A DNA stretch of 64,000 nucleotides from Salisapilia sapeloensis CBS 127946 (GCA_023334545.1 JAADVB010000083.1:1-64000), one strand, 5' to 3'; shown: positions 1,722-25,131, counted from the stretch's first letter. The notes: generated by a model from the letters alone, not told the origin. Made by a program: numbers and translations.

Positions 1722-3179
1722 TTAAACAAACGTATTCGAGCGGTTACGACGTTGGAAAGAGTAGGATAGACCCCACGTAGCTACTGCCCACAGTAACCAT
1801 ACGACAGCAAAGAGTAGCAAGTCTCGGAGACCGTCATGGTCTTTGGAGCACGATGGATCGAGCACTGGTTGGCCATGGATGATGATCGTGCCGCAATGTG
1901 GAGCCCAGTGGTCTTTCAGCCATCCGAGGACAAGTGGCGATGGGACGTCCCCGAAGACATGGATGAGGAGCGTGTTGGCAGCAATAGCCATCGGACGTAG
2001 ACGAGGAGGAAAGAGTTCCATGACAGCGATGCTTTCGGCTGGAGCAGTTGCACATAGACAGAAGAAGCAACCGGCTAAGACTGTCATGAAAGCAGTGCGA
2101 TGGTAGGAGAGCGTAACCATGAAAAGTCCAAGGATCTCTGCAGCTGTGATGAGAGTGATCAACGTCGTGACAGCTAGGTAACAGCGTCGTCTAGAGAATA
2201 GAGGCGAGGTAGTATCTGTCGTTCCTTCTCGTTGCACCATCTTATCGACTACGATACCTCCTATAGGCGTTCCAATCGTACCTGTGATGACGATTAACAA
2301 GCCAAAGACTGTAGCTACTTGAGTTTCACTGTCAAAGAAACCGAGACCGATGAAAATGACAGGACTAAAGGTACTGAGAGATGCAAGGGAGAATGTATAA
2401 GCAGCGTACCCTGCAACGATCAGGACAAAATGGAAATTGCCAAAGATGGACAGCCACGGGTTTTCTGTCTCCGCTTCATCGACGGATGCTTTGAACTCAA
2501 TGTCACTACCATCCACTTTGTCGATGGACATTGGGATCGTTGCAATGCATAAAGATACGAGACATAGCATGAGGATCGCTTCGAGATAGAATGCAAACTG
2601 CCATCCAAGTGTTGAGGATGCGAAGAGAGCTCCATAGATGTATCCTGTCGCAGTTCCCACGGTGATAGAAGCGAGGAAAACTCCAAGATACATAGCACGA
2701 CGGCCTTTTGGGGCATGCAGATCAATAAATGGCGTGGCGACACATTGGAACGAGGCTTCCCCGACACCACTGAGAATGCGGCCGAATAGTAAGACCCAGT
2801 AGCTATCTGCTTGACGAGCAATGCCGCAGATAATGACCGCGAGCATCCATATCGACATGCCACCAGCGATCAGACGGAACGGTCTAACAGACAACGCAAG
2901 GAATCCAAAGAGCAGACTGCACACACAGTAACTAGCAATAAATGCAGAGGCGAGGAGGCCGAGGTAAAAGGACTGTTCTGTCGGTGGTACATGCAGCGTC
3001 GAGCTAATAAAGCTCTGGAACTGCTGCGGAGCCCCTGGGATGATCCCCCGATCGACATAATTCAACAAATTGATGGTACATAATAGTACAATAGCTCCTT
3101 GACTCGATAATGTACATGCAGCAGACTTGCGTTTAACTGTCGGCAGTAAAGGAGATGCGAGTTCCCGTTCATCTTCCAT
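1722..3179 (-). CDS. SPNS: Spinster-like MFS transporter (485 aa, intronless)
   Basis: About 12 hydrophobic segments; INLLNYVDRGII, GRILSGVGEASF..VATPFID and IHVFGDVPSP are Spinster-family motifs. Confidence 0.85.
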   Translation of the reverse strand: MEDERELASPLLPTVKRKSAACTLSSQGAIVLLCTINLLNYVDRGIIPGAPQQFQSFISSTLHVPPTEQSFYLGLLASAFIASYCVCSLLFGFLALSVRPFRLIAGGMSIWMLAVIICGIARQADSYWVLLFGRILSGVGEASFQCVATPFIDLHAPKGRRAMYLGVFLASITVGTATGYIYGALFASSTLGWQFAFYLEAILMLCLVSLCIATIPMSIDKVDGSDIEFKASVDEAETENPWLSIFGNFHFVLIVAGYAAYTFSLASLSTFSPVIFIGLGFFDSETQVATVFGLLIVITGTIGTPIGGIVVDKMVQREGTTDTTSPLFSRRRCYLAVTTLITLITAAEILGLFMVTLSYHRTAFMTVLAGCFFCLCATAPAESIAVMELFPPRLRPMAIAANTLLIHVFGDVPSPLVLGWLKDHWAPHCGTIIIHGQPVLDPSCSKDHDGLRDLLLFAVVWLLWAVATWGLSYSFQRRNRSNTFV

Positions 3180-3405
3180 CTTCTCGTCCGATCAAATTCG
3201 CTTCGATCGACTAGCTTCAAAAACCGATATGATGTATACACACTTCAAGTCAGAAGATTGACATGACAAGGAATGGATTAGGAAGTCGATTTCTATCATG
3301 CAACCATGACAAAGATGATATTAGACGGCAAAAATCACTTTGGTATTGACGTTATGCCTTATACGAGACGACTATTCCACTTTCGTCTGGAAGATTTTGT
3401 CGCAT

Positions 3406-3665
3406 TTAGTAGTACGGGCCGAAAGGTGGGCGGTCCCAGTAGGGAGAGTAGTAGGGGCGGTAGTATGGATATCCACCATAGAAGAACTCTTGATTGTCTT
3501 TTGTACAAAGTGTGTCAGGGCAAGCGATAGCATGAGTAGTGTAGAGAGTACGATACCTTCGTTTTGTGCGTTCTCTTGCAGCATGTTGTTCGCGTCTTCG
3601 TCTGCAATGACAGGCGATGCAATGTACAAGAGCGCGATAAGAGCGAAGATGGATGAAGTCTTCAT
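3406..3665 (-). CDS. Small secreted Tyr/Pro/Gly-rich peptide precursor (66 aa, 2 exons)
   Basis: Exon 3557-3665, GT-AG intron 3498-3556 (59 nt) and exon 3406-3497 join in frame: MKTSSIFALIALLYIASPVIA-DEDANNMLQENAQNEDNQE-FFYGGYPYYRPYYSPYWDRPPFGPYY*. Clear signal-peptide-like N-terminus. Caveat: the first-exon frame is open upstream to about 3995. Confidence 0.72.
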
Positions 3666-4365
3666 GCTGTTCAGGCAGTTTTTTGGAGTTTGGAGGTTGT
3701 TCTTGGACTGTAGAAGGCGAAAAGCCAAGTGAGCTATCGTTGGACTCTGGCAACTGAAAGCAGCGGTCATCTTCATCCCAATCTTTCGGCAACCGTCAGC
3801 GGATGCATCTAGACATAAAAGTTTCTTTGCGACTCCATCAATCCACTTCTTGAGCTTTTGTGGTAAGTTCGGTCGGCAGGTACATGTCAATCGCTTAGCA
3901 GACTTTTCGTACACGAATGCATCACGCAGGAAGCTTGTCAAGTATTGGATCACTGCAAATTTCTGCATTATATGATAGATAATGATCCCATTCACAGATA
4001 GATCATGATTGAAGCCTCTCGTGCGAGTATGTAAATTCAGTTGTCAAAAATAAGTTCATGGTAACCTAGGAATACAATGTATCTTCCGATATCAATGCCT
4101 CTTCCAAATACTATAGACCATTTATTTAGTGTCCTACAACCAAACTGTCGCCTCGAAATGCATTCCAGTACTCGCATTGATGTTTTGATGCGCATATACA
4201 TTTCGCGCGGTACATATGCATTGCCATATTCATTCATATGTTCGGCATGGTATAGATTGATATTTGCTTTTTGATGAGATGTTTGTAGATTAAACTGGGG
4301 ACTAGGCTTTCTGTTGTTGCGTGAAATCCACGACAAGTATGCTAATGTACAAAATAGATTAAGGT

Positions 4366-19930: not shown

Positions 19931-20959
19931 TTAGACAGATCCTTCCACCACACCGGCGCGAGTCGAGTTCTTCTTGGTTTCCGTCGACTCGATAACCTCT
20001 TCCTCTTCCTCCTCGTTACCAGATGACGAGTCACCATCCTCTTCCTCGCTCTCTTCGCCAGCCTGCGTGGTCTTGATCTCGAGCTCATCGTCGCTGCTCT
20101 CGAGCTCGTCGTTCGAAGGAGCGTCTTCGTCACGTCCCTCTTCCACGTCCTTTGCGGTCTCCTCCTCCTGCTGCTTGCTGCGGTTGGTGAAGGCGACGGC
20201 GATGGCAGCCATCACGGCAGCAGCACCAGCAATTCCACCAGCGATCGTAGCAGGGTTCTCAATCACAGAGTTGGCCTTCTCTTCATCCTTATCCTCGGTC
20301 GAAGCCTTCGTGGCCGTCTCGTGCGTAGTAGCCTCTGCCGCCTCCGTGGTCTCAGCCTTAGCTTCCTTGGGCTCCTCGACCTTTTGCTCGACCGGGTCCT
20401 TGACATTGACGTTCACATCGACGTTTCCGTCGCTACCGTAGTGAACACGAATGATGGACGGACCATCGACCTCGAGTTCCTCATCGATGCTTTCGTTCGG
20501 GCCGATGTCAAAGTCCTGGTAAATGTCTCCGGAGCCAGAGTAGTCCATGCTCATGGAGCCTTCAAAGTCCTCAATCTCGACGTCTTCCATTTCAGATCCT
20601 TCGAGGGAAGAATCAATCCTGTAGGACGCGTCTTCCGTAGACGACCAGTCCGCGTACACGGCGTCACCGACGGCCGTAGCTTCCATCTGAGACCCAAAGT
20701 CACCATCAGCTTCCACATCCCCCGAAGACGAGACGTCGACATCCCCGTCCGTGACGTCGTAGCTTTCTTCCTCAGGAGTCTCCTCGGCTGTAGCCGGGAC
20801 CGCATCCACCGAGTCGTGAGACTTGTGGTGATGGTGACGGTGATGGTGCTTGTGGTGCTTGTGGGGGTGGCTTTCATAGTCAAACTGCTGCTTAGCGTCC
20901 ACTGCCACGACGAGGGCTGCTGCCAAGACGATCGCCTTCAGTCCTGTACGTAAAACCAT
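19931..20959 (-). CDS. Predicted type I membrane protein: signal peptide, His-rich tract, acidic ectodomain, one TM helix, acidic tail (342 aa)
   Basis: MVLRTGLKAIVLAAALVVAVDA signal; HPHKHHKHHHRHHHHKSH; D/E/S-rich body; TM IAGGIAGAAAVMAAIAVAF; E-rich C-terminal tail. GC-rich third codon positions support coding. Confidence 0.8.
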   Translation of the reverse strand: MVLRTGLKAIVLAAALVVAVDAKQQFDYESHPHKHHKHHHRHHHHKSHDSVDAVPATAEETPEEESYDVTDGDVDVSSSGDVEADGDFGSQMEATAVGDAVYADWSSTEDASYRIDSSLEGSEMEDVEIEDFEGSMSMDYSGSGDIYQDFDIGPNESIDEELEVDGPSIIRVHYGSDGNVDVNVNVKDPVEQKVEEPKEAKAETTEAAEATTHETATKASTEDKDEEKANSVIENPATIAGGIAGAAAVMAAIAVAFTNRSKQQEEETAKDVEEGRDEDAPSNDELESSDDELEIKTTQAGEESEEEDGDSSSGNEEEEEEVIESTETKKNSTRAGVVEGSV

Positions 20960-21237
20960 CTTCTTCGAGCACAATAAGATCTGGAAGGAGCTGGGCGAGT
21001 TCGGAAATGAGTTGGGTAATGAACCTAGAATCCACCGCTGGCGTCTCTTATAAAAAAACAGTGGATATGGAAAATGACAAAGCGGGAGTCCTTCACTTTC
21101 AAAATCATCTTGCTCTTCTTTGTACACAGCCCGGATTTGGCATTAACCCAAAAAAGTGAACCCATGGACATGCTTAAGTAGAAATAGATACAAAGTGGAC
21201 GCGTTTTTATTGCACGGGGTAGGGCACAGCACCATAA

Positions 21238-21246: not shown

Positions 21247-21355
21247 ATTCGTTGCACTCGACCAATTTTGTCAATCAGACTTGATCGGTAGCTTTATTCT
21301 TCCCGGTGTGGAGCTATCTTTTCGCTTCGAGGAAAATAGTGAGCTAGTATCTCCG

Positions 21356-21897
21356 ATGAAGACGTTGATGGGGATTGGAGTCGATGTAGCATTTGTACCA
21401 AGATTTGAGCGGTTACTAGATCGTTATGGGCAGAGATTTCTAGAGAGAGCATATCACGTGGAAGAAATTTCGCACTTGAAAGCCATGTCCGAGTCGCAAC
21501 GTCCACTCTTTCTTGCGTCCAGGTTCGATCCATACGAGGTCGCGAATAACATGAGTTGAAACGTAGAGAGCGTAGGTGGGCAATGAAAGAAGCTACGTAT
21601 AAAGCATTCCAGCACTATCGGATCCCATTTCCTGATATACACGTCCGGAAGGTTAAAAATCCACCTCCAACGCACGTCCAGGCACTGCTACCTCCATCCA
21701 ATACGACAGCTCTAGAGCTCATGTTCACTGGAGACACAGCTTCCATCGCCAAGGAGCTCCAGATACGGGTAGTTCCTCTACTTCCGACCCTGCCAACCGA
21801 CATCTAACGTATAAAGTAGGAAAAGTATGTATCCATCTCGCACGACAAAGACTATGCCGTCGCGTACGTCGTGCTGATGCAAGAATCTCCACTATAA
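21356..21897 (+). CDS. acpS: AcpS-type 4'-phosphopantetheinyl transferase (holo-ACP synthase), 3 exons
   Basis: MGIGVDVAFVPRFERLL, FLASR|WAMKEATYKAF and VSISHDKDYAVAYV are AcpS family motifs; two short introns restore them; stop TAA at 21895-21897. Confidence 0.92.
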
Positions 21898-21940
21898 ATT
21901 GGATACAAAGCTTCTCTTATTACGAATTATTCACACGTGT

Positions 21941-24763
21941 TCACTCTCGAGGCGTCGTGTACGTCTGTCGGACTTGGGCCACCCAGTCTTCCACAGCTTC
22001 AAGCGAGAACAAGTCTAGTTCCTCGTCTTTCTCCTTCTCCTGCACGATCGCGTCCCACTTGGCACGCATCGTGACGTTCGCGAGTTGTTTAAATTCTTCA
22101 ATTAAAGCATCAAAGTCTTGACGTCCTTCCGACATGGCTCCCTGTCGTTCCATCCACAAGACAAACACATTCGATTGCTTCCCCACCAACGCTCGTTCGT
22201 AGCGAGAACAGTCATGTGCAATCGTACCTTCCCACTCTAAGTACTCTCCGATCTGGTGGAGATAGTGAAGTCTCGACGGCGTTAACACGTCCGTCGGTAG
22301 TGACAACGAGTCAATAAGAAGCAGCATCGTAGCTTGCCATCGCTTCGCAAGCAGCTGCAAGCTCGCGACCATCTCGTCTTCTGCGCCTGCAACCTTTTGC
22401 GCCAAAGCTTGAGATTCCAAGATCGTACGCAGGAGCTTGCGTTGCTCCGACACAAGCGCCTCTCGGAGTTTCGTGTGTGGGACGTCCTGCTCAATATGGT
22501 AGTGGAGCACTTGCCACAAAGCCAAGACAAGCGGCAGACCAGTCGCGAGAAGCTCATCTGACGGAGGTAGCTCCATCAAGAGCGCTCGACTACGCGTCGG
22601 GTCTTCATGCGCCACGACACTCGATAGGAATTTGCGCGCTTCTTCCGGACGCACCTCCAACAACCGGTACGACAAGATGTTAATGAGTACCGACAGCAAT
22701 TGGAGTTTGTTCTGGAGCGCTAGATTCGCGCGAGACGTGACGTCTTGCTCGTCCGATGCAATGATCCGACGCATAGGCGCCAATACCGAGAAGATGTTGC
22801 CGAGACGAGCGTACCCTTTGTCTCCAAGCAATTGCTGTCGAATCAAATCGTTCACCTTGCCTTCCGTCTGCGGCGTAATGGCGATAAACTGCGGGTGGCT
22901 GTGCATGGCTTCGAATGCCAGGTTTAGACTCACCACGTCATCTAGGTGCGGCACAGGCAGCTCGACGTAGAACATGGATGGACGATGGACGTTCACGGGC
23001 GATCGAGGTGGAGATGTGCTTCGAATCTCCGAGAACACTGCGTGGGCAGACAAGTACTCTTTCGCAGTCTCCATGTTCACTCGACTGCGGCCGTTCATGT
23101 ACGTACAGACTTCGGCCACGAGTTCACTTGAGGCACCAGCCGCGACGGCAATGTTACGTGCGTGGAGAGCCATGTGACCCTTTTGGATGCCCGTGACGGC
23201 AATCGCGCGCATGGCAGCAAAGTTTTGTGCCAGACCGACCGAAACGAGAATGCCACTGAGCTGTCGCGCGGTCGGGTACTTGAGAATGGCACGTGTGGAG
23301 GCGTAGCCAGGGTGTGTGAGAAGAGCACCACCCTTGGATCCGACAGAGAGAGGTAACTCCAGACTACCGCGGAAGACCTTGCCATTATCCGTGTCGACGA
23401 CTTCGTAGTGCGACAGACTCGCGTACTGTCCCGAGCGACTGGCGTAGCAGTGCGCAGCGGCTTCAATGGCTCGCCAGTCCTGTCCAGATGCCAAGGCCGC
23501 AGCGTCGACGCCATTCATGATACCCTTGTTGTTCGTGACGGCACGGAATGGGTCGATGGCGGCAAAATTGTAGGCTTCGAGCATCTTGCTGGCCACTTCT
23601 TCGCCGCTTACGCCCTTCCATCCGAGCTTCGAGAGCGGGATCTCGAACGATGCACGGGCTCGACGCTGCATACACAAGTTGGTGAGGATACGAAGACCTG
23701 CGCGGCCATTGGTGAGACGGCAGATCTCATCCGACAGACCTTCCGCCACAGTGTTCACGATGTTAGCACCCATGGCTTCACACACATCGACGTCGATGTG
23801 CACGACGAGGTAATTCGTCTCCTTGGACGTTGGTGTGATACTGATTTCATCGTCACACGGAGTATACCAAGCGTTCTTCCTGGACGGAAGGTCCGATGCC
23901 TTTACGAGACGGCAGTAGACGTCGACGACACCACCATGACGTTTGGCCATGTTCGGACATAGATTCACATTTGCATACTTCATGAGACTTTGTTTGTTGC
24001 TTTCAATCGCTTCCATCGCGAACGGGATGTCTGGTACGTCGACGAGTTGAATCTGAGACGTCATGACATTGCCAGTGGTAGCTGTGCTGAAGCCACCGCC
24101 ATGGGCAGCCACGAGTTTCGCGGCACTGGAGGCAGCAGCAACGACAGAAGGCTCTTCCACTGCCATGGGAACAGACAGAGCCTTGCCATCGATGACAAAG
24201 TTCAGGCCGAGACCGAGCGGTAGTCCGAGGACGCCGACACAATTCTCGACCATGAGATTGGCTTCACGCAACGGCAAGTCGCCGAGCTTGGATGTCGAGT
24301 CTGAGCTCTCTGGCTCCGATGGCTGGATGCGCTGGAGATTCGGGTACATGAGCGACAGCACGTCGAAGCGCTCTCGCAGCGTCTTGCTGTAGAATCCAGA
24401 CCAAATAGATGGCTGGGACGTTGTGGCTGGCTTGCTCTCTTCGCCAAAGTTGACGTCGTCGTCGGATTCATGTTGCGTTGGTGTGAGCGTTTCGAAGCGC
24501 TTGGTCGGAAGCGCGTCGGTTTGCTGTGGGACGGACGAGTCATTGAGTGTGTGCACGAGCTCCGTCAGTTCGTGGAGCTTGGTCTGTGTTGATGGCAGCA
24601 GCGTCTCTTGGCGCTCTCGAGCCACTTGCAGCAGCTTGTGTGCCGACTGCAATTGCTCCAGCGCCGAGTCGAGCGTAGCGGCGAGTTGATCGACCGAGTT
24701 GTACGTAACTGCAGACGCATCATGGGTCGTGTCGTTCTCGTTGAAATCAGACTTGGCAGTCAT
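21941..24763 (-). CDS. mvaA: Class II (bacterial-type) HMG-CoA reductase with N-terminal coiled coil and ~360-aa C-terminal helical extension (940 aa, intronless)
   Basis: MVENCVG, VPMAVEEPSVVAAAS (catalytic Glu), EAMGANIVNT, DPFRAVTNNKGIMNGVDA (Lys), GQDWRAIEA (Asp) and GIQKGHMALHARN (His) are class II signatures. No membrane/sterol-sensing domain. Confidence 0.93.
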   Translation of the reverse strand: MTAKSDFNENDTTHDASAVTYNSVDQLAATLDSALEQLQSAHKLLQVARERQETLLPSTQTKLHELTELVHTLNDSSVPQQTDALPTKRFETLTPTQHESDDDVNFGEESKPATTSQPSIWSGFYSKTLRERFDVLSLMYPNLQRIQPSEPESSDSTSKLGDLPLREANLMVENCVGVLGLPLGLGLNFVIDGKALSVPMAVEEPSVVAAASSAAKLVAAHGGGFSTATTGNVMTSQIQLVDVPDIPFAMEAIESNKQSLMKYANVNLCPNMAKRHGGVVDVYCRLVKASDLPSRKNAWYTPCDDEISITPTSKETNYLVVHIDVDVCEAMGANIVNTVAEGLSDEICRLTNGRAGLRILTNLCMQRRARASFEIPLSKLGWKGVSGEEVASKMLEAYNFAAIDPFRAVTNNKGIMNGVDAAALASGQDWRAIEAAAHCYASRSGQYASLSHYEVVDTDNGKVFRGSLELPLSVGSKGGALLTHPGYASTRAILKYPTARQLSGILVSVGLAQNFAAMRAIAVTGIQKGHMALHARNIAVAAGASSELVAEVCTYMNGRSRVNMETAKEYLSAHAVFSEIRSTSPPRSPVNVHRPSMFYVELPVPHLDDVVSLNLAFEAMHSHPQFIAITPQTEGKVNDLIRQQLLGDKGYARLGNIFSVLAPMRRIIASDEQDVTSRANLALQNKLQLLSVLINILSYRLLEVRPEEARKFLSSVVAHEDPTRSRALLMELPPSDELLATGLPLVLALWQVLHYHIEQDVPHTKLREALVSEQRKLLRTILESQALAQKVAGAEDEMVASLQLLAKRWQATMLLLIDSLSLPTDVLTPSRLHYLHQIGEYLEWEGTIAHDCSRYERALVGKQSNVFVLWMERQGAMSEGRQDFDALIEEFKQLANVTMRAKWDAIVQEKEKDEELDLFSLEAVEDWVAQVRQTYTTPRE

Positions 24764-25131
24764 GGCTTGTCCGATCTACTGACGATTGGAAAATGAAGCT
24801 GACGAGCGGTCACTAGCCGAGCGATGTACGAGGGATGAGACAGTCGTCTTATTGTGCCCAAGAGATACCGAGCCGGAATAAGAAACTCAAAGGGTAATGG
24901 GCGCGTATAAACGTCTTCCCTCGAGTCACGTCAATACGAATACAAGTAGAGGAGGAAGATAGGCAAGGATGCACACAACGTTGCGAATCGAGTATGTCTG
25001 CCGCCGTCCGATCCGTTCGATTCGAGTAGCCTATTTTACGTCTATGCGATGTTTCGACTGAGAGGAATACATTCATTTTGATAACATTCTAGCCCATATC
25101 GCTGCCCTGTCTATTTTACGCAACGAATACT

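What the first reader, a model, noticed from the sequence alone, without database searches (positions are those of the whole stretch)
21941..24763. Soluble class II HMG-CoA reductase fused to a degenerate prenyl-diphosphate-synthase-like domain: possible novel feedback module for the mevalonate pathway
The enzyme has all class II catalytic motifs (EEPSVVAA, TNNKG, GQDWRA, GHMALH); note TNNK in place of the usual THNK. It has no membrane or sterol-sensing domain, which eukaryotic class I enzymes use for regulation. Instead it carries an N-terminal coiled coil and a ~360-aa all-helical C-terminal extension (about 21941-23000). That extension contains K..ATMLLLID...LHQIGEYLEWEGTIAHDCSRYE...KQSNVF (about 22199-22252), which aligns by eye with the 'G.yFQi.DD..D....K' second Asp-rich region of trans-isoprenyl diphosphate synthases, with DDxxD decayed to HDCSR. 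Hypothesis: a catalytically dead IPPS fold that senses FPP/GGPP end products and allosterically controls HMGR, or scaffolds pathway enzymes. That would be a regulatory logic distinct from Insig/SSD control, and a possible selective drug target because class II enzymes are relatively statin-insensitive.
Basis: partly seen in the sequence, partly recalled or inferred. Interest (0 to 1): 0.72.

Follow-up and report, generated by a model that had tools for sequence, protein, structure and literature searches.

The report
Soluble HMG-CoA reductase with terpene-synthase-fold tail
This oomycete's only HMG-CoA reductase is a bacterial-type (class II) soluble enzyme fused to a previously unnamed domain with the terpene-synthase fold but without its catalytic aspartate motifs; the same fusion occurs in chytrid fungi, Capsaspora, a plasmodiophorid and an amoebozoan, so it may be an old, unstudied way for eukaryotes to control or extend the mevalonate pathway.

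Summary
Window 21941-24763 (-) is one unspliced, transcribed 940-aa ORF.

- **Catalytic domain (residues ~117-574).** This is a class II HMG-CoA reductase with all four catalytic motifs, and it is the only HMGR hit in this 22-Mb assembly.
- **Motifs.** No DDxxD or NSE/DTE motif is conserved. A small polar set is kept across the family: R808, D818, E843, D851 and N865.
- **Distribution.** The fusion is not peculiar to this genome. A profile search found 141 proteins. Every long one carries HMGR upstream, and the two 'stand-alone' hits I examined are fragments. Named members are oomycetes, chytrids, blastoclads, Capsaspora, Spongospora and Nolandella.
- **Origin.** The fused HMGR domains form one group (support 100) apart from the 80 nearest bacterial enzymes, none of which has this domain.

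The proposed prenyl-diphosphate sensing and allostery remain untested: the complex prediction gave no verdict, and the full-length model (pTM 0.53) shows no fixed docking. Interest: moderately high.

The parts
21941..24763 (-). Whole gene: a single unspliced 940-aa ORF (stop codon at 21941-21943). It encodes class II HMGR plus a terpene-synthase-fold domain.
   Evidence: ORF list. RNA-derived contigs of two samples (X2, X3) cover 21819-25039 or 25075 without any joint, while introns of the neighbouring gene are spliced out.
24416..24763 (-). N-terminal extension, residues 1-116. It is variable and acidic, with a weakly conserved helical stretch. No targeting peptide or membrane segment is evident.
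   Evidence: Alignment of 15 oomycete N-termini and hydropathy scan.
23042..24415 (-). Class II HMG-CoA reductase catalytic domain, residues ~117-574, including the C-terminal flap that carries the GHMALH histidine.
   Evidence: PF00368 E 2.6e-88. TIGR00532 scores 297 bits, above its cut-off of 259.95. PDB 6dio, 9v7y and 1qax match at E 1e-85 or better. Identity among oomycetes is 61-75%.
24134..24157 (-). EEPSVVAA motif (residues 203-210), which holds the catalytic Glu.
   Evidence: Aligned to the VEEPSVVAA / VEEPSIVAA motif of 6dio and 1qax; invariant in orthologues.
23939..23959 (-). Cofactor helix CPNMAKR (residues 269-275). C, M and R are invariant across the fused family. It lacks the Asp of NADH-type enzymes and keeps the terminal Arg of NADPH-type enzymes.
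   Evidence: Aligned to YPSIVKR of 3qae. The motif rule Dx(V/L)xxxL versus (H/Y)xSxxxR is quoted in PMC13488460. Invariants.
23522..23536 (-). TNNKG motif (residues 410-414), which holds the catalytic Lys. Asn replaces the His of bacterial THNKG.
23468..23485 (-). GQDWRA motif (residues 427-432), which holds the catalytic Asp.
23162..23179 (-). GHMALH motif (residues 529-534), which holds the catalytic His of the flap domain.
22874..23041 (-). Linker plus conserved three-strand beta element, residues 575-630 (motifs PSMFYVE and SLNLAFE). It sits at the start of the C-terminal domain.
   Evidence: AF2 secondary structure. Conserved across the broad family. The stretch at about residues 583-591 has pLDDT below 50.
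21944..22957 (-). Helical bundle with the class I terpenoid-synthase / IPPS alpha fold, residues ~603-940. It has no Pfam family.
22655..22681 (-). NILSYRLLE (residues 695-703) on the long helix that, by spacing, should correspond to helix D where DDxxD/FARM normally sits. No Asp-rich motif is present.
   Evidence: Helix positions, the spacing argument set out in the report, motif regex and alignment. The helix assignment is inferred, because no coordinates were available.
22310..22345 (-). KRWQATMLLLID (residues 807-818) on the kinked helix pair. R808 is kept in 24 of 28 family members and D818 in 26 of 28.
   Evidence: helices 221-235 and 237-247 of the domain model.
22190..22237 (-). EWEGTIAHDCSRYERA (residues 843-858) at the end of the helix that corresponds to helix H (the NSE/DTE or SARM position). 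D851 is invariant and E843 is kept in 26 of 28; N865 follows.
   Evidence: The best local hhalign hit places HD on the ND of the terpene-synthase NSE motif, at probability 0.8%.

Best explanation
**Shown.**
- The gene encodes the only detectable HMG-CoA reductase of this oomycete. It is a soluble class II enzyme with an intact active site.
- It is fused in one transcribed, unspliced ORF to a ~340-residue domain with the class I terpenoid-synthase / isoprenyl-diphosphate-synthase alpha fold.
- That domain has no DDxxD/FARM motif and no canonical NSE/DTE/SARM motif.
- This domain family is found only behind class II HMGR, in a group of eukaryotic enzymes that branches apart from the nearest bacterial ones.

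**Inferred.**
- The catalytic domain makes mevalonate for non-sterol isoprenoids. Its cofactor helix suggests it uses NADPH or both cofactors.
- The tail is a pseudo-enzyme that has lost the metal cluster needed to ionise a prenyl diphosphate. It keeps a ligand site built from R808, D818, E843, D851 and N865 on the helices that bind the diphosphate in true synthases.
- It begins directly after the mobile flap that carries the catalytic His. Ligand binding (a prenyl diphosphate or another phosphorylated pathway intermediate) is therefore proposed to change flap closure or oligomer state, and so tune HMGR activity or stability.
For: **Single gene, expressed, under constraint.**
- One ORF.
- RNA contigs cover it without joints.
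- Of 37 listed differences from a close relative, 27 are synonymous and 10 are not.

**HMGR identity and active site:**

**Only HMGR in the assembly:**. The same assembly has three IPPS genes, no DXR and no oxidosqualene/squalene-hopene cyclase.

**Fold:**, with a weak supporting lead.

**Loss of canonical motifs:**. **Retained polar set:**

**Always fused.**
- Of 141 profile hits, every long one has HMGR upstream.
- The two apparent stand-alone proteins I checked are fragments.
- A Trinity transcript of Nolandella carries both domains.

**Distinct group:** SH-aLRT 100. **Not in bacteria:** no such domain in or next to the 80 nearest bacterial HMGR genes.

**Precedents (established knowledge, not tested here).** Catalytically dead IPPS-like small subunits regulate heteromeric GPP synthases. 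GGPP controls yeast Hmg2 stability.
Against: - No ligand or interaction has been shown.
- The complex prediction gave no verdict.
- The full-length AF2 monomer has pTM 0.53 and a floppy linker, so no fixed contact between the domains is predicted.
- The tail evolves faster than the enzyme (36-50% against 61-75% identity). Fungal members carry 100-200-residue insertions.
- I had no model coordinates, so I could not show that the conserved residues line a pocket. Their helix assignment rests on spacing.
- HMG-CoA synthase was not found in the assembly, so pathway context is incomplete.
- Saprolegnia also has what appears to be a plant-like class I HMGR: its closest match outside stramenopiles is a rice-relative protein (PMC5289490). 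In some lineages the fused enzyme may therefore not be the main biosynthetic one.
Confidence: 0.42

Rival explanations
1. The tail is an active, non-canonical enzyme of the terpene-synthase fold, such as a prenyltransferase, a cyclase with unusual metal ligands, or a prenyl-diphosphate hydrolase. On this view the protein is bifunctional.
For: - Charged residues D818, E843, D851, R808 and N865 are kept over very wide eukaryotic distances. That pattern is typical of active sites.
- The feature search listed DUF2600 (tetraprenyl-beta-curcumene synthase) clusters, at a low score of 0.85.
Against: - There is no Asp-rich first motif anywhere on the candidate helix D.
- HMGR and any prenyl-diphosphate-using step lie five or more reactions apart. 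A fusion would therefore not channel a substrate, unlike the bacterial HMGR-mevalonate kinase fusions seen.
- There is no profile similarity to terpene synthases or IPPS.
Confidence: 0.2
2. The tail binds no small-molecule ligand. It is an assembly, scaffolding or localisation module: it could set the oligomer state of HMGR, tether other mevalonate-pathway enzymes, or hold the soluble enzyme at a membrane in place of the class I membrane anchor.
For: - It has lower sequence conservation than the catalytic domain and tolerates large insertions.
- IPPS-fold and terpene-synthase-fold proteins commonly dimerise, and class II HMGRs work as dimers or hexamers (established knowledge; oligomer states are discussed in PMC13488460).
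- The conserved beta element ahead of the bundle could be an interface.
Against: - The invariant Asp and near-invariant Glu, Asp, Arg and Asn lie on the two helices that form the diphosphate site in true synthases. Pure scaffolding does not explain that well.
- No hydrophobic or amphipathic membrane segment was seen.
- No interface was predicted, although that result is not evidence against one.
Confidence: 0.25
3. The fusion is an artefact: two adjacent genes read as one ORF, or an assembly chimera.
For: None found. The only caveat is that the RNA evidence consists of assembled contigs, not raw reads.
Against: - The frame is continuous with no stop.
- RNA contigs from two samples run through the domain junction.
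- The same architecture is found in 45 oomycete proteins and in many other eukaryotes, including a transcriptome-derived protein.
- Codon-level constraint runs across the junction.
Confidence: 0.01

Closest known systems
Bacterial class II HMG-CoA reductases (Pseudomonas mevalonii 1qax, Delftia acidovorans 6dio, Burkholderia 6p7k, Streptococcus pneumoniae 3qae/5wpj)
   Same: - Same catalytic domain, with E/K/D/H motifs, cofactor helix and C-terminal flap.
- E-values of 1e-78 to 1e-89.
- 43-47% identity to the nearest genomic relatives in Myxococcota, Chloroflexota and Binatia.
   Different: - The window's enzyme is eukaryotic and has a 116-residue N-terminal extension.
- It has a ~49-residue stretch in the small domain (about residues 266-314) that does not align to the solved enzymes.
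- TNNK replaces THNK.
- The cofactor helix reads CxNxxxR, which fits neither published motif exactly.
- It carries a 366-residue C-terminal domain that is absent from all 80 nearest bacterial genes.
Class I terpene synthases (drimenol synthase 7cjy, pimarane-type diterpene synthases 7e4o/7e4m, selinadiene synthase 4okm, 2-methylisoborneol synthase 3v1v)
- It includes a kinked helix pair and a long helix at the position of helix H.
   Different: - 9-13% identity and no profile similarity.
- No DDxxD and no (N/D)Dxx(S/T)xxxE motif.
- An extra N-terminal beta element.
- It is fused to HMGR.
trans-Isoprenyl diphosphate synthases (FPPS, GGPPS and long-chain synthases: 9jqs, 2azj, 3tc1, 2rah)
   Different: - Slightly weaker structural match than to the cyclases.
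- No FARM or SARM motif.
- hhalign against this genome's own GGPPS exon gives probability 0.1-0.2%.
Non-canonical terpene-synthase-fold enzymes (DabA N-prenyltransferase 6vkz; beta-prene 'large terpene' synthase 5yo8; YtpB/DUF2600)
   Same: - Same fold, with altered or missing textbook motifs.
   Different: Those proteins have demonstrated catalysis and their own metal-binding motifs. Nothing of the kind is shown here, and there is no sequence relationship.
Catalytically inactive IPPS-like regulatory subunits (small subunits of heteromeric GPP synthase; GGPPS-recruiting protein)
   Same: They give a functional precedent for a dead isoprenoid-synthase fold that regulates an isoprenoid enzyme. 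This comes from established knowledge and was not tested here.
   Different: - Those are recognisable IPPS homologues that pair with an active IPPS.
- This domain has no IPPS sequence signal, and its partner is HMGR in cis.
Feedback control of class I HMGR (Insig/sterol-sensing-domain-mediated degradation; GGPP-triggered degradation of yeast Hmg2)
   Same: If the sensor hypothesis holds, the logic is the same: an isoprenoid end product acts on HMGR itself. This comes from established knowledge.
   Different: The hardware is entirely different. Here there is a soluble enzyme with no membrane domain, and the candidate sensor is a terpene-synthase-fold domain.
Other HMGR fusions: thiolase-HMGR (MvaE type, PDB 7m1z) and bacterial HMGR-mevalonate kinase fusions
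   Same: A class II HMGR joined to a second pathway-related domain in one polypeptide.
   Different: Those fusions join enzymes of adjacent steps, and the partner domains are standard families (thiolase, GHMP kinase). Here the partner has no named family and lacks catalytic motifs.

Membership tests
Class II HMG-CoA reductase (PF00368; TIGR00532) | Profile match above the curated cut-offs | tested here: met
   PF00368 scores 296.9 bits (cut-off 27). TIGR00532 scores 297 bits (cut-off 259.95). The class I models TIGR00533 and TIGR00920 score only 20-23 bits, far below their cut-offs.
Class II HMG-CoA reductase (PF00368; TIGR00532) | Catalytic Glu, Lys, Asp and His in the conserved motifs | tested here: met
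   EEPSV, T(N)NKG, GQDWRA and GHMALH align column for column with 6dio and 1qax. They are invariant in the fused family.
Class II HMG-CoA reductase (PF00368; TIGR00532) | Soluble enzyme with no N-terminal membrane or sterol-sensing domain | tested here: met
   There is no other Pfam domain. The maximum 19-residue hydropathy is 1.62, inside the catalytic core.
Class II HMG-CoA reductase (PF00368; TIGR00532) | Cofactor helix with an NADH-type Dx(V/L)xxxL or NADPH-type (H/Y)xSxxxR motif | tested here: inconclusive
   The helix is present and reads CPNMAKR. The terminal Arg and the Met at position 4 fit the NADPH type, there is no Asp, and Cys and Asn replace His/Tyr and Ser. Cofactor preference needs an assay.
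Class II HMG-CoA reductase (PF00368; TIGR00532) | Reductase activity on HMG-CoA | not testable with these tools
   This needs an enzyme assay.
Class I terpenoid synthase / trans-IPPS superfamily (isoprenoid synthase alpha fold) | All-alpha isoprenoid-synthase fold | tested here: met
Class I terpenoid synthase / trans-IPPS superfamily (isoprenoid synthase alpha fold) | First Asp-rich motif (DDxxD or DDxxxxD) on helix D | tested here: not met
   No conserved occurrence in the 25 oomycete or the 28 diverse members. Sporadic matches lie only in variable loops. The candidate helix reads NILSYRLLE.
Class I terpenoid synthase / trans-IPPS superfamily (isoprenoid synthase alpha fold) | Second metal-binding motif on helix H: (N/D)Dxx(S/T)xxxE, or a second DDxxD | tested here: not met
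   The pattern occurs in 0 of 25 and 0 of 28 members. Only a remnant is kept, E843 and the invariant D851. Its register against the canonical motif is unresolved.
Class I terpenoid synthase / trans-IPPS superfamily (isoprenoid synthase alpha fold) | Sequence-profile membership (PF00348, PF03936, PF19086, PF00494) | tested here: not met
   No Pfam hit for any of the 25 members, even at E 10. hhalign against GGPPS and against terpene-synthase domains gives probability below 1%.
Class I terpenoid synthase / trans-IPPS superfamily (isoprenoid synthase alpha fold) | Binding or turnover of a prenyl diphosphate | not testable with these tools
   This needs binding and product assays.

The most novel reading that the evidence does not exclude
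The terpene-synthase-fold tail is a dedicated sensor of a prenyl diphosphate, or another phosphorylated mevalonate-pathway intermediate, that feedback-controls a soluble class II HMGR in cis. The fused enzyme would be an ancient eukaryotic invention, inherited largely vertically: in the tree, oomycetes group with a rhizarian, and chytrids and blastoclads group with Capsaspora. That would make it a second, sterol-independent mode of HMGR control in eukaryotes, and the only one left in sterol-auxotrophic oomycete plant pathogens.
Probability: 0.22. Interest if true: 0.82.

Novelty: new variant of a known kind. Interest (0 to 1): 0.62.

Why it matters
**Gap in current knowledge.**
- The P. sojae mevalonate-pathway study treats its single HMGR as yeast-like and mentions neither the class nor the extra domain (PMC9635365).

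**What this report adds.**
- The sole HMGR of this oomycete is a class II enzyme, and class II enzymes with the same tail occur across oomycete genera and in several other eukaryotic lineages.
- That tail is an unnamed family (no Pfam model) with a terpene-synthase fold and no canonical catalytic motifs.
- This gives a concrete, testable candidate for how soluble HMGR is regulated where the Insig/sterol-sensing system is absent.

**Possible practical use.**
- It could explain the weak lovastatin effect in Phytophthora.
- It points to a target, both the class II active site and the tail's conserved site, that plant and animal hosts appear to lack: no plant or genuine animal sequence was found, the one insect-labelled record grouping with an amoebozoan.

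**Evolutionary question.** Is the fusion an early eukaryotic acquisition that was later lost many times, or was it passed between eukaryotes?

Tried and rejected
1. **Complex prediction, HMGR domain against tail.** Score 0.01 and no verdict. This is evidence neither for nor against binding.
2. **Full-length AF2.** The domains are confident but pTM is 0.53, so no interdomain pose can be claimed.
3. **Sequence-level link to IPPS or terpene synthases.**
   - Pfam on 25 members found nothing.
   - A PDB profile search found only a chance CurA hit at E 0.66.
   - hhalign against this genome's GGPPS exon 2 found nothing.
   - hhalign against 13 myxobacterial terpene-synthase domains, both global and local, was not significant.
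4. **First genome-contig scan, with the GGPPS exon.** It found no relatives.
5. **Residue-level structural mapping of helix D and helix H motifs.** Not possible, because no model coordinates are exposed. I used helix order and spacing instead. Two registers remain open for the helix H remnant: either E843 or H850 corresponds to the first residue of NSE.
6. **Search for a bacterial source of the tail.**
   - There is none in or beside the 80 nearest bacterial HMGR genes.
   - The ~330-residue C-terminal extensions seen in six bacterial loci are GHMP (mevalonate) kinases, not this domain.
7. **Apparent stand-alone tail proteins P0062 and P0069.** Both are fragments on ~1.2-kb contigs. The conserved motif or the HMGR end continues upstream of the called start.
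8. **Literature searches.** They turned up no description of the fusion.
9. **Spliced models.** The GGPPS gene (L002) is split by an intron just before its first Asp-rich motif. I searched exon 2 alone by reference and did not join the exons.
Full report
**What is in the sequence.**
- Window 21941-24763 (minus strand) is a single 940-codon ORF with no internal stop.
- Pfam places HMG-CoA_red (PF00368) on residues 159-535 at E 2.6e-88 and finds nothing else.
- NCBIfam's class II model TIGR00532 scores 297 bits, above its cut-off of 259.95. The class I models score about 20 bits against cut-offs of 440-780.
- The best solved relatives are all class II enzymes: 6dio, 9v7y, 1qax, 6p7k, 3qae and 5wpj, at E 1e-78 to 1e-89. 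Human class I HMGR reaches only E 0.006.
They align column for column with the solved enzymes.
- TNNK in place of THNK is the norm in the fused family: T, the second N, K and G are invariant, and the first N is the consensus residue.
- The conserved core begins at about residue 117 (QPSIWSGFY...). The 116 residues before it are variable, with a weakly conserved helical stretch.
- No membrane segment is evident.

**The gene is real and expressed.**
- Contigs from two samples of another study (X2, X3) behave as RNA. They skip two GT..AG introns (21521-21573 and 21768-21818) of the convergent neighbouring gene and leave the intergenic stretches uncovered.
- The same contigs run without a joint from 21819 to 25039 or 25075, across the whole ORF and the domain junction. 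These are assembled contigs, so they show presence but not transcript ends.
- A close relative (organism B, 90-97% identical pieces) differs at 37 listed positions in the tail and the flap region. Of these, 27 are synonymous and 10 are not, and 27 of 37 fall at third codon positions. This is a sample, since the tool did not show a further 106 differences.

**Genome context.**
- A six-frame Pfam search of the 22.4-Mb assembly finds this gene as its only HMGR.
- The assembly has three isoprenyl-diphosphate-synthase genes and one SQS/PSY-family gene.
- It has no DXP reductoisomerase and no squalene/oxidosqualene cyclase domain. That fits a mevalonate-only, sterol-auxotrophic oomycete.
- HMG-CoA synthase was not detected with either Pfam half. 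With 1365 contigs, this may only reflect an incomplete assembly.

**The C-terminal domain.**
- Residues 575-940 have no Pfam family, even when 25 orthologues are each scanned at E 10.
- A word-based search seeded from this region found 45 proteins, all oomycete HMGRs of 750-1100 residues. They include Phytophthora, Pythium, Lagenidium, Peronospora, Plasmopara, Hyaloperonospora and Aphanomyces, at 36-50% identity over 95-100% of the domain.
- The catalytic domains of the same proteins are 61-75% identical.
- An AF2 model built from 25 sequences is confident: pLDDT 82, pTM 0.85. It shows three short strands (domain residues 22-55) followed by a bundle of long helices.

**Fold.**
- Foldseek independently lists only the same superfamily among its top 50, with best E 2.4e-3 and probability 1.00.
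- The language-model feature search gave scores of 0.85-0.89, below its 0.9 threshold for more than a lead. Its lower ranks included terpene-synthase, DUF2600 and 'class 1 isoprenoid biosynthesis' clusters.
- An unnamed Bathyarchaeota cluster came up in both the feature search and the shape search, with TM 0.66 in the latter.
- I therefore accept the fold assignment.

**Motifs.**
- No DDxxD, DDxxxxD or (N/D)Dxx(S/T)xxxE is conserved in the 25 oomycete domains or in 28 diverse ones. The few matches fall in variable loops.
- Across the diverse set, L816, G839 and D851 are invariant. S596, L645, D818, E843 and N865 are 90% or more conserved. R808 is kept in 24 of 28 members and K649 in 23 of 28.
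- I had no coordinates, so helix correspondence is inferred from order and spacing. In bacterial and plant class I synthases the first motif lies about 140 residues before the second, and the second about 100 residues before the end of the fold (established knowledge of pentalenene, selinadiene and 5-epi-aristolochene synthases).
- On that spacing the second site falls on the model's helix 255-279 (protein residues 829-853), which carries EWEGTIAHD. The first site falls on helix 107-130 (protein residues 681-704), which reads ...LINILSYRLLE and has no acidic cluster.
- The kinked helix pair 221-235/237-247, which carries R808 and D818, would then correspond to helices G1/G2.
That alignment has probability only 0.8%, and the global alignment fails.
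- An alternative register, E843-x3-T847-x3-D851 on N-x3-S-x3-E, fits the spacing about as well. I leave this open.
- Against this genome's own GGPPS (exon 2 only; the exons were not joined), hhalign gives probability 0.1-0.2%.

**Distribution.**
- A profile of the oomycete domains, searched against 1.84 billion representative proteins, found 141 proteins at E 0.001 or better.
- Every hit long enough to show it has a class II HMGR domain directly upstream. The rest are short pieces.
- Two apparently complete stand-alone proteins sit on ~1.2-kb metagenome contigs. They continue upstream of the called start into the conserved strand motif or into the end of HMGR.
- Named members are listed below:
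  - Capsaspora owczarzaki;
  - Allomyces macrogynus, Paraphysoderma and Sorochytrium (blastoclads);
  - Fimicolochytrium, Entophlyctis, Boothiomyces and Dinochytrium (chytrids);
  - Spongospora subterranea (a plasmodiophorid);
  - Nolandella (an amoebozoan, from a Trinity transcript);
  - one record labelled Schistocerca gregaria.
- The 80 nearest bacterial HMGR genes are 43-47% identical and come from Myxococcota, Chloroflexota, Binatia, Zixibacteria and Bacillota. They have nothing resembling the tail in the gene or within 3 kb.
- Six of those bacterial genes carry a different C-terminal fusion, a GHMP-type (mevalonate) kinase.

**Tree.**
- In a maximum-likelihood tree of 29 fused and 80 bacterial catalytic domains, the fused enzymes form one side of a branch with SH-aLRT 100.
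- Inside that group, the oomycetes are one clade (100) in a weakly supported group with Spongospora (88).
- Chytrids, blastoclads and Capsaspora group together (96).
- Nolandella pairs with the 'Schistocerca' record (97).
- This resembles the organismal tree and so hints at old, mostly vertical inheritance with many losses.
- The tree is unrooted, the bacterial sample holds only the closest 80 genes, and several rows have long branches or odd composition. I rate this as a lead, not a result.

**How it probably works.**
- *Shown:* an intact class II HMGR; a terpene-synthase-fold tail without the canonical metal-binding motifs; obligate fusion; purifying selection.
- *Inferred:* the enzyme supplies mevalonate for prenylation, dolichol and ubiquinone.
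- Its cofactor helix (CPNMAKR, residues 269-275) lacks the Asp of the NADH motif Dx(V/L)xxxL. It keeps the Met at position 4 and the terminal Arg of the NADPH motif (H/Y)xSxxxR.
- I therefore expect NADPH or dual cofactor use, despite the database label 'degradative'.
- Having lost the first Asp-rich site, the tail is unlikely to ionise a prenyl diphosphate. The retained Arg/Asp/Glu/Asp/Asn set on the two helices that hold the diphosphate-Mg site in true synthases suggests that it still binds a phosphorylated ligand.
- The tail starts within about 40 residues of the catalytic His of the mobile flap. Coupling of ligand binding to flap closure or to oligomer state is a reasonable mechanism, but nothing here tests it.
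- The complex predictor gave no verdict, and the full-length monomer model does not fix the two domains relative to each other (pTM 0.53).
- I put the regulatory-sensor reading at about 0.4, an assembly or localisation role at 0.25, an active non-canonical enzyme at 0.2, and an artefact at 0.01. The remaining 0.1 or so I leave unassigned.

**Relation to the literature.**
- The P. sojae mevalonate paper reports a single HMGR, compares it with yeast and discusses statins. In the passages I searched it mentions neither class II nor any extra domain. In that study, 80 ug/ml lovastatin reduced growth by only 31.9% (PMC9635365).
- Dahlin et al. list an HMGR for Saprolegnia whose nearest non-stramenopile match is a plant protein, which suggests a class I enzyme. 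The passages of their P. infestans table that I saw list no HMGR (PMC5289490).
- Five full-text searches found no description of the fusion. The library lacks most subscription journals, so earlier mention elsewhere cannot be excluded.

**Verdict.**
- The functional hypothesis is plausible but untested.
It is a eukaryote-wide, unnamed domain family locked to class II HMGR, not a quirk of one gene.
It is not independent evidence.

Noticed in passing
window 21281-21900 (+): A convergent neighbour gene encodes a 4'-phosphopantetheinyl transferase (ACPS superfamily; two exon pieces match at E 8e-5 and 4e-3). It has two short GT..AG introns, at 21521-21573 and 21768-21818, both confirmed by RNA contigs. 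The same RNA contig runs on into the HMGR gene, so the two 3' ends abut or overlap.
   Followed up: partly
L071:2764-5103, L061:2644-5103, L087:2818-5130, L025:2012-4318, L026:2412-4799, L086: Bacterial class II HMGR genes from Zixibacteria, Ignavibacteriaceae and unclassified MAGs are fused at the C-terminus to a GHMP-kinase (probably mevalonate kinase) domain of ~330 residues. They form one clade in the HMGR tree.
   Followed up: partly
G000 (whole assembly): Neither Pfam half of HMG-CoA synthase (PF01154, PF08540) was found in the 22.4-Mb, 1365-contig assembly, although HMGR, five GHMP-kinase hits and three IPPS genes are present. Either the assembly is incomplete or HMG-CoA comes from another route such as leucine breakdown.
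   Followed up: no
G000 (whole assembly): No DXP reductoisomerase and no squalene/oxidosqualene cyclase domain were found, and only one SQS/PSY-family hit (C945:26372-27145, with two stops inside the match, which may be introns). This is consistent with a mevalonate-only sterol auxotroph.
   Followed up: no
window 20900-20990 (gene 19931-21127, -): RNA contigs over the 5' part of the acidic, His-rich surface-protein gene have a word depth of 2400-3900, against 36-50 for the HMGR gene in the same runs. Depth of contigs is a poor measure of expression, but the gap is large.
   Followed up: no
L002:1234-2220 (G000:C1255): This genome's GGPPS-type gene has an intron that falls just before the first Asp-rich motif...NASLL | IDDIEDD.... 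The exons were not joined.
   Followed up: no
P0050 (record XP_049849846.1, labelled Schistocerca gregaria): A fused class II HMGR on a 426-kb contig of a locust assembly groups with the amoebozoan Nolandella in the HMGR tree (SH-aLRT 97). That suggests a contaminant or associated protist rather than an insect gene.
   Followed up: no
P0147 cluster (1255 aa, 58 members, ENA metagenomes) with P0169 and P0184: A long-branched subgroup of the fused family has atypical amino-acid composition. It has about 480 extra N-terminal residues and comes from unnamed metagenome contigs of up to 115 kb. Its organism is unknown.
   Followed up: no
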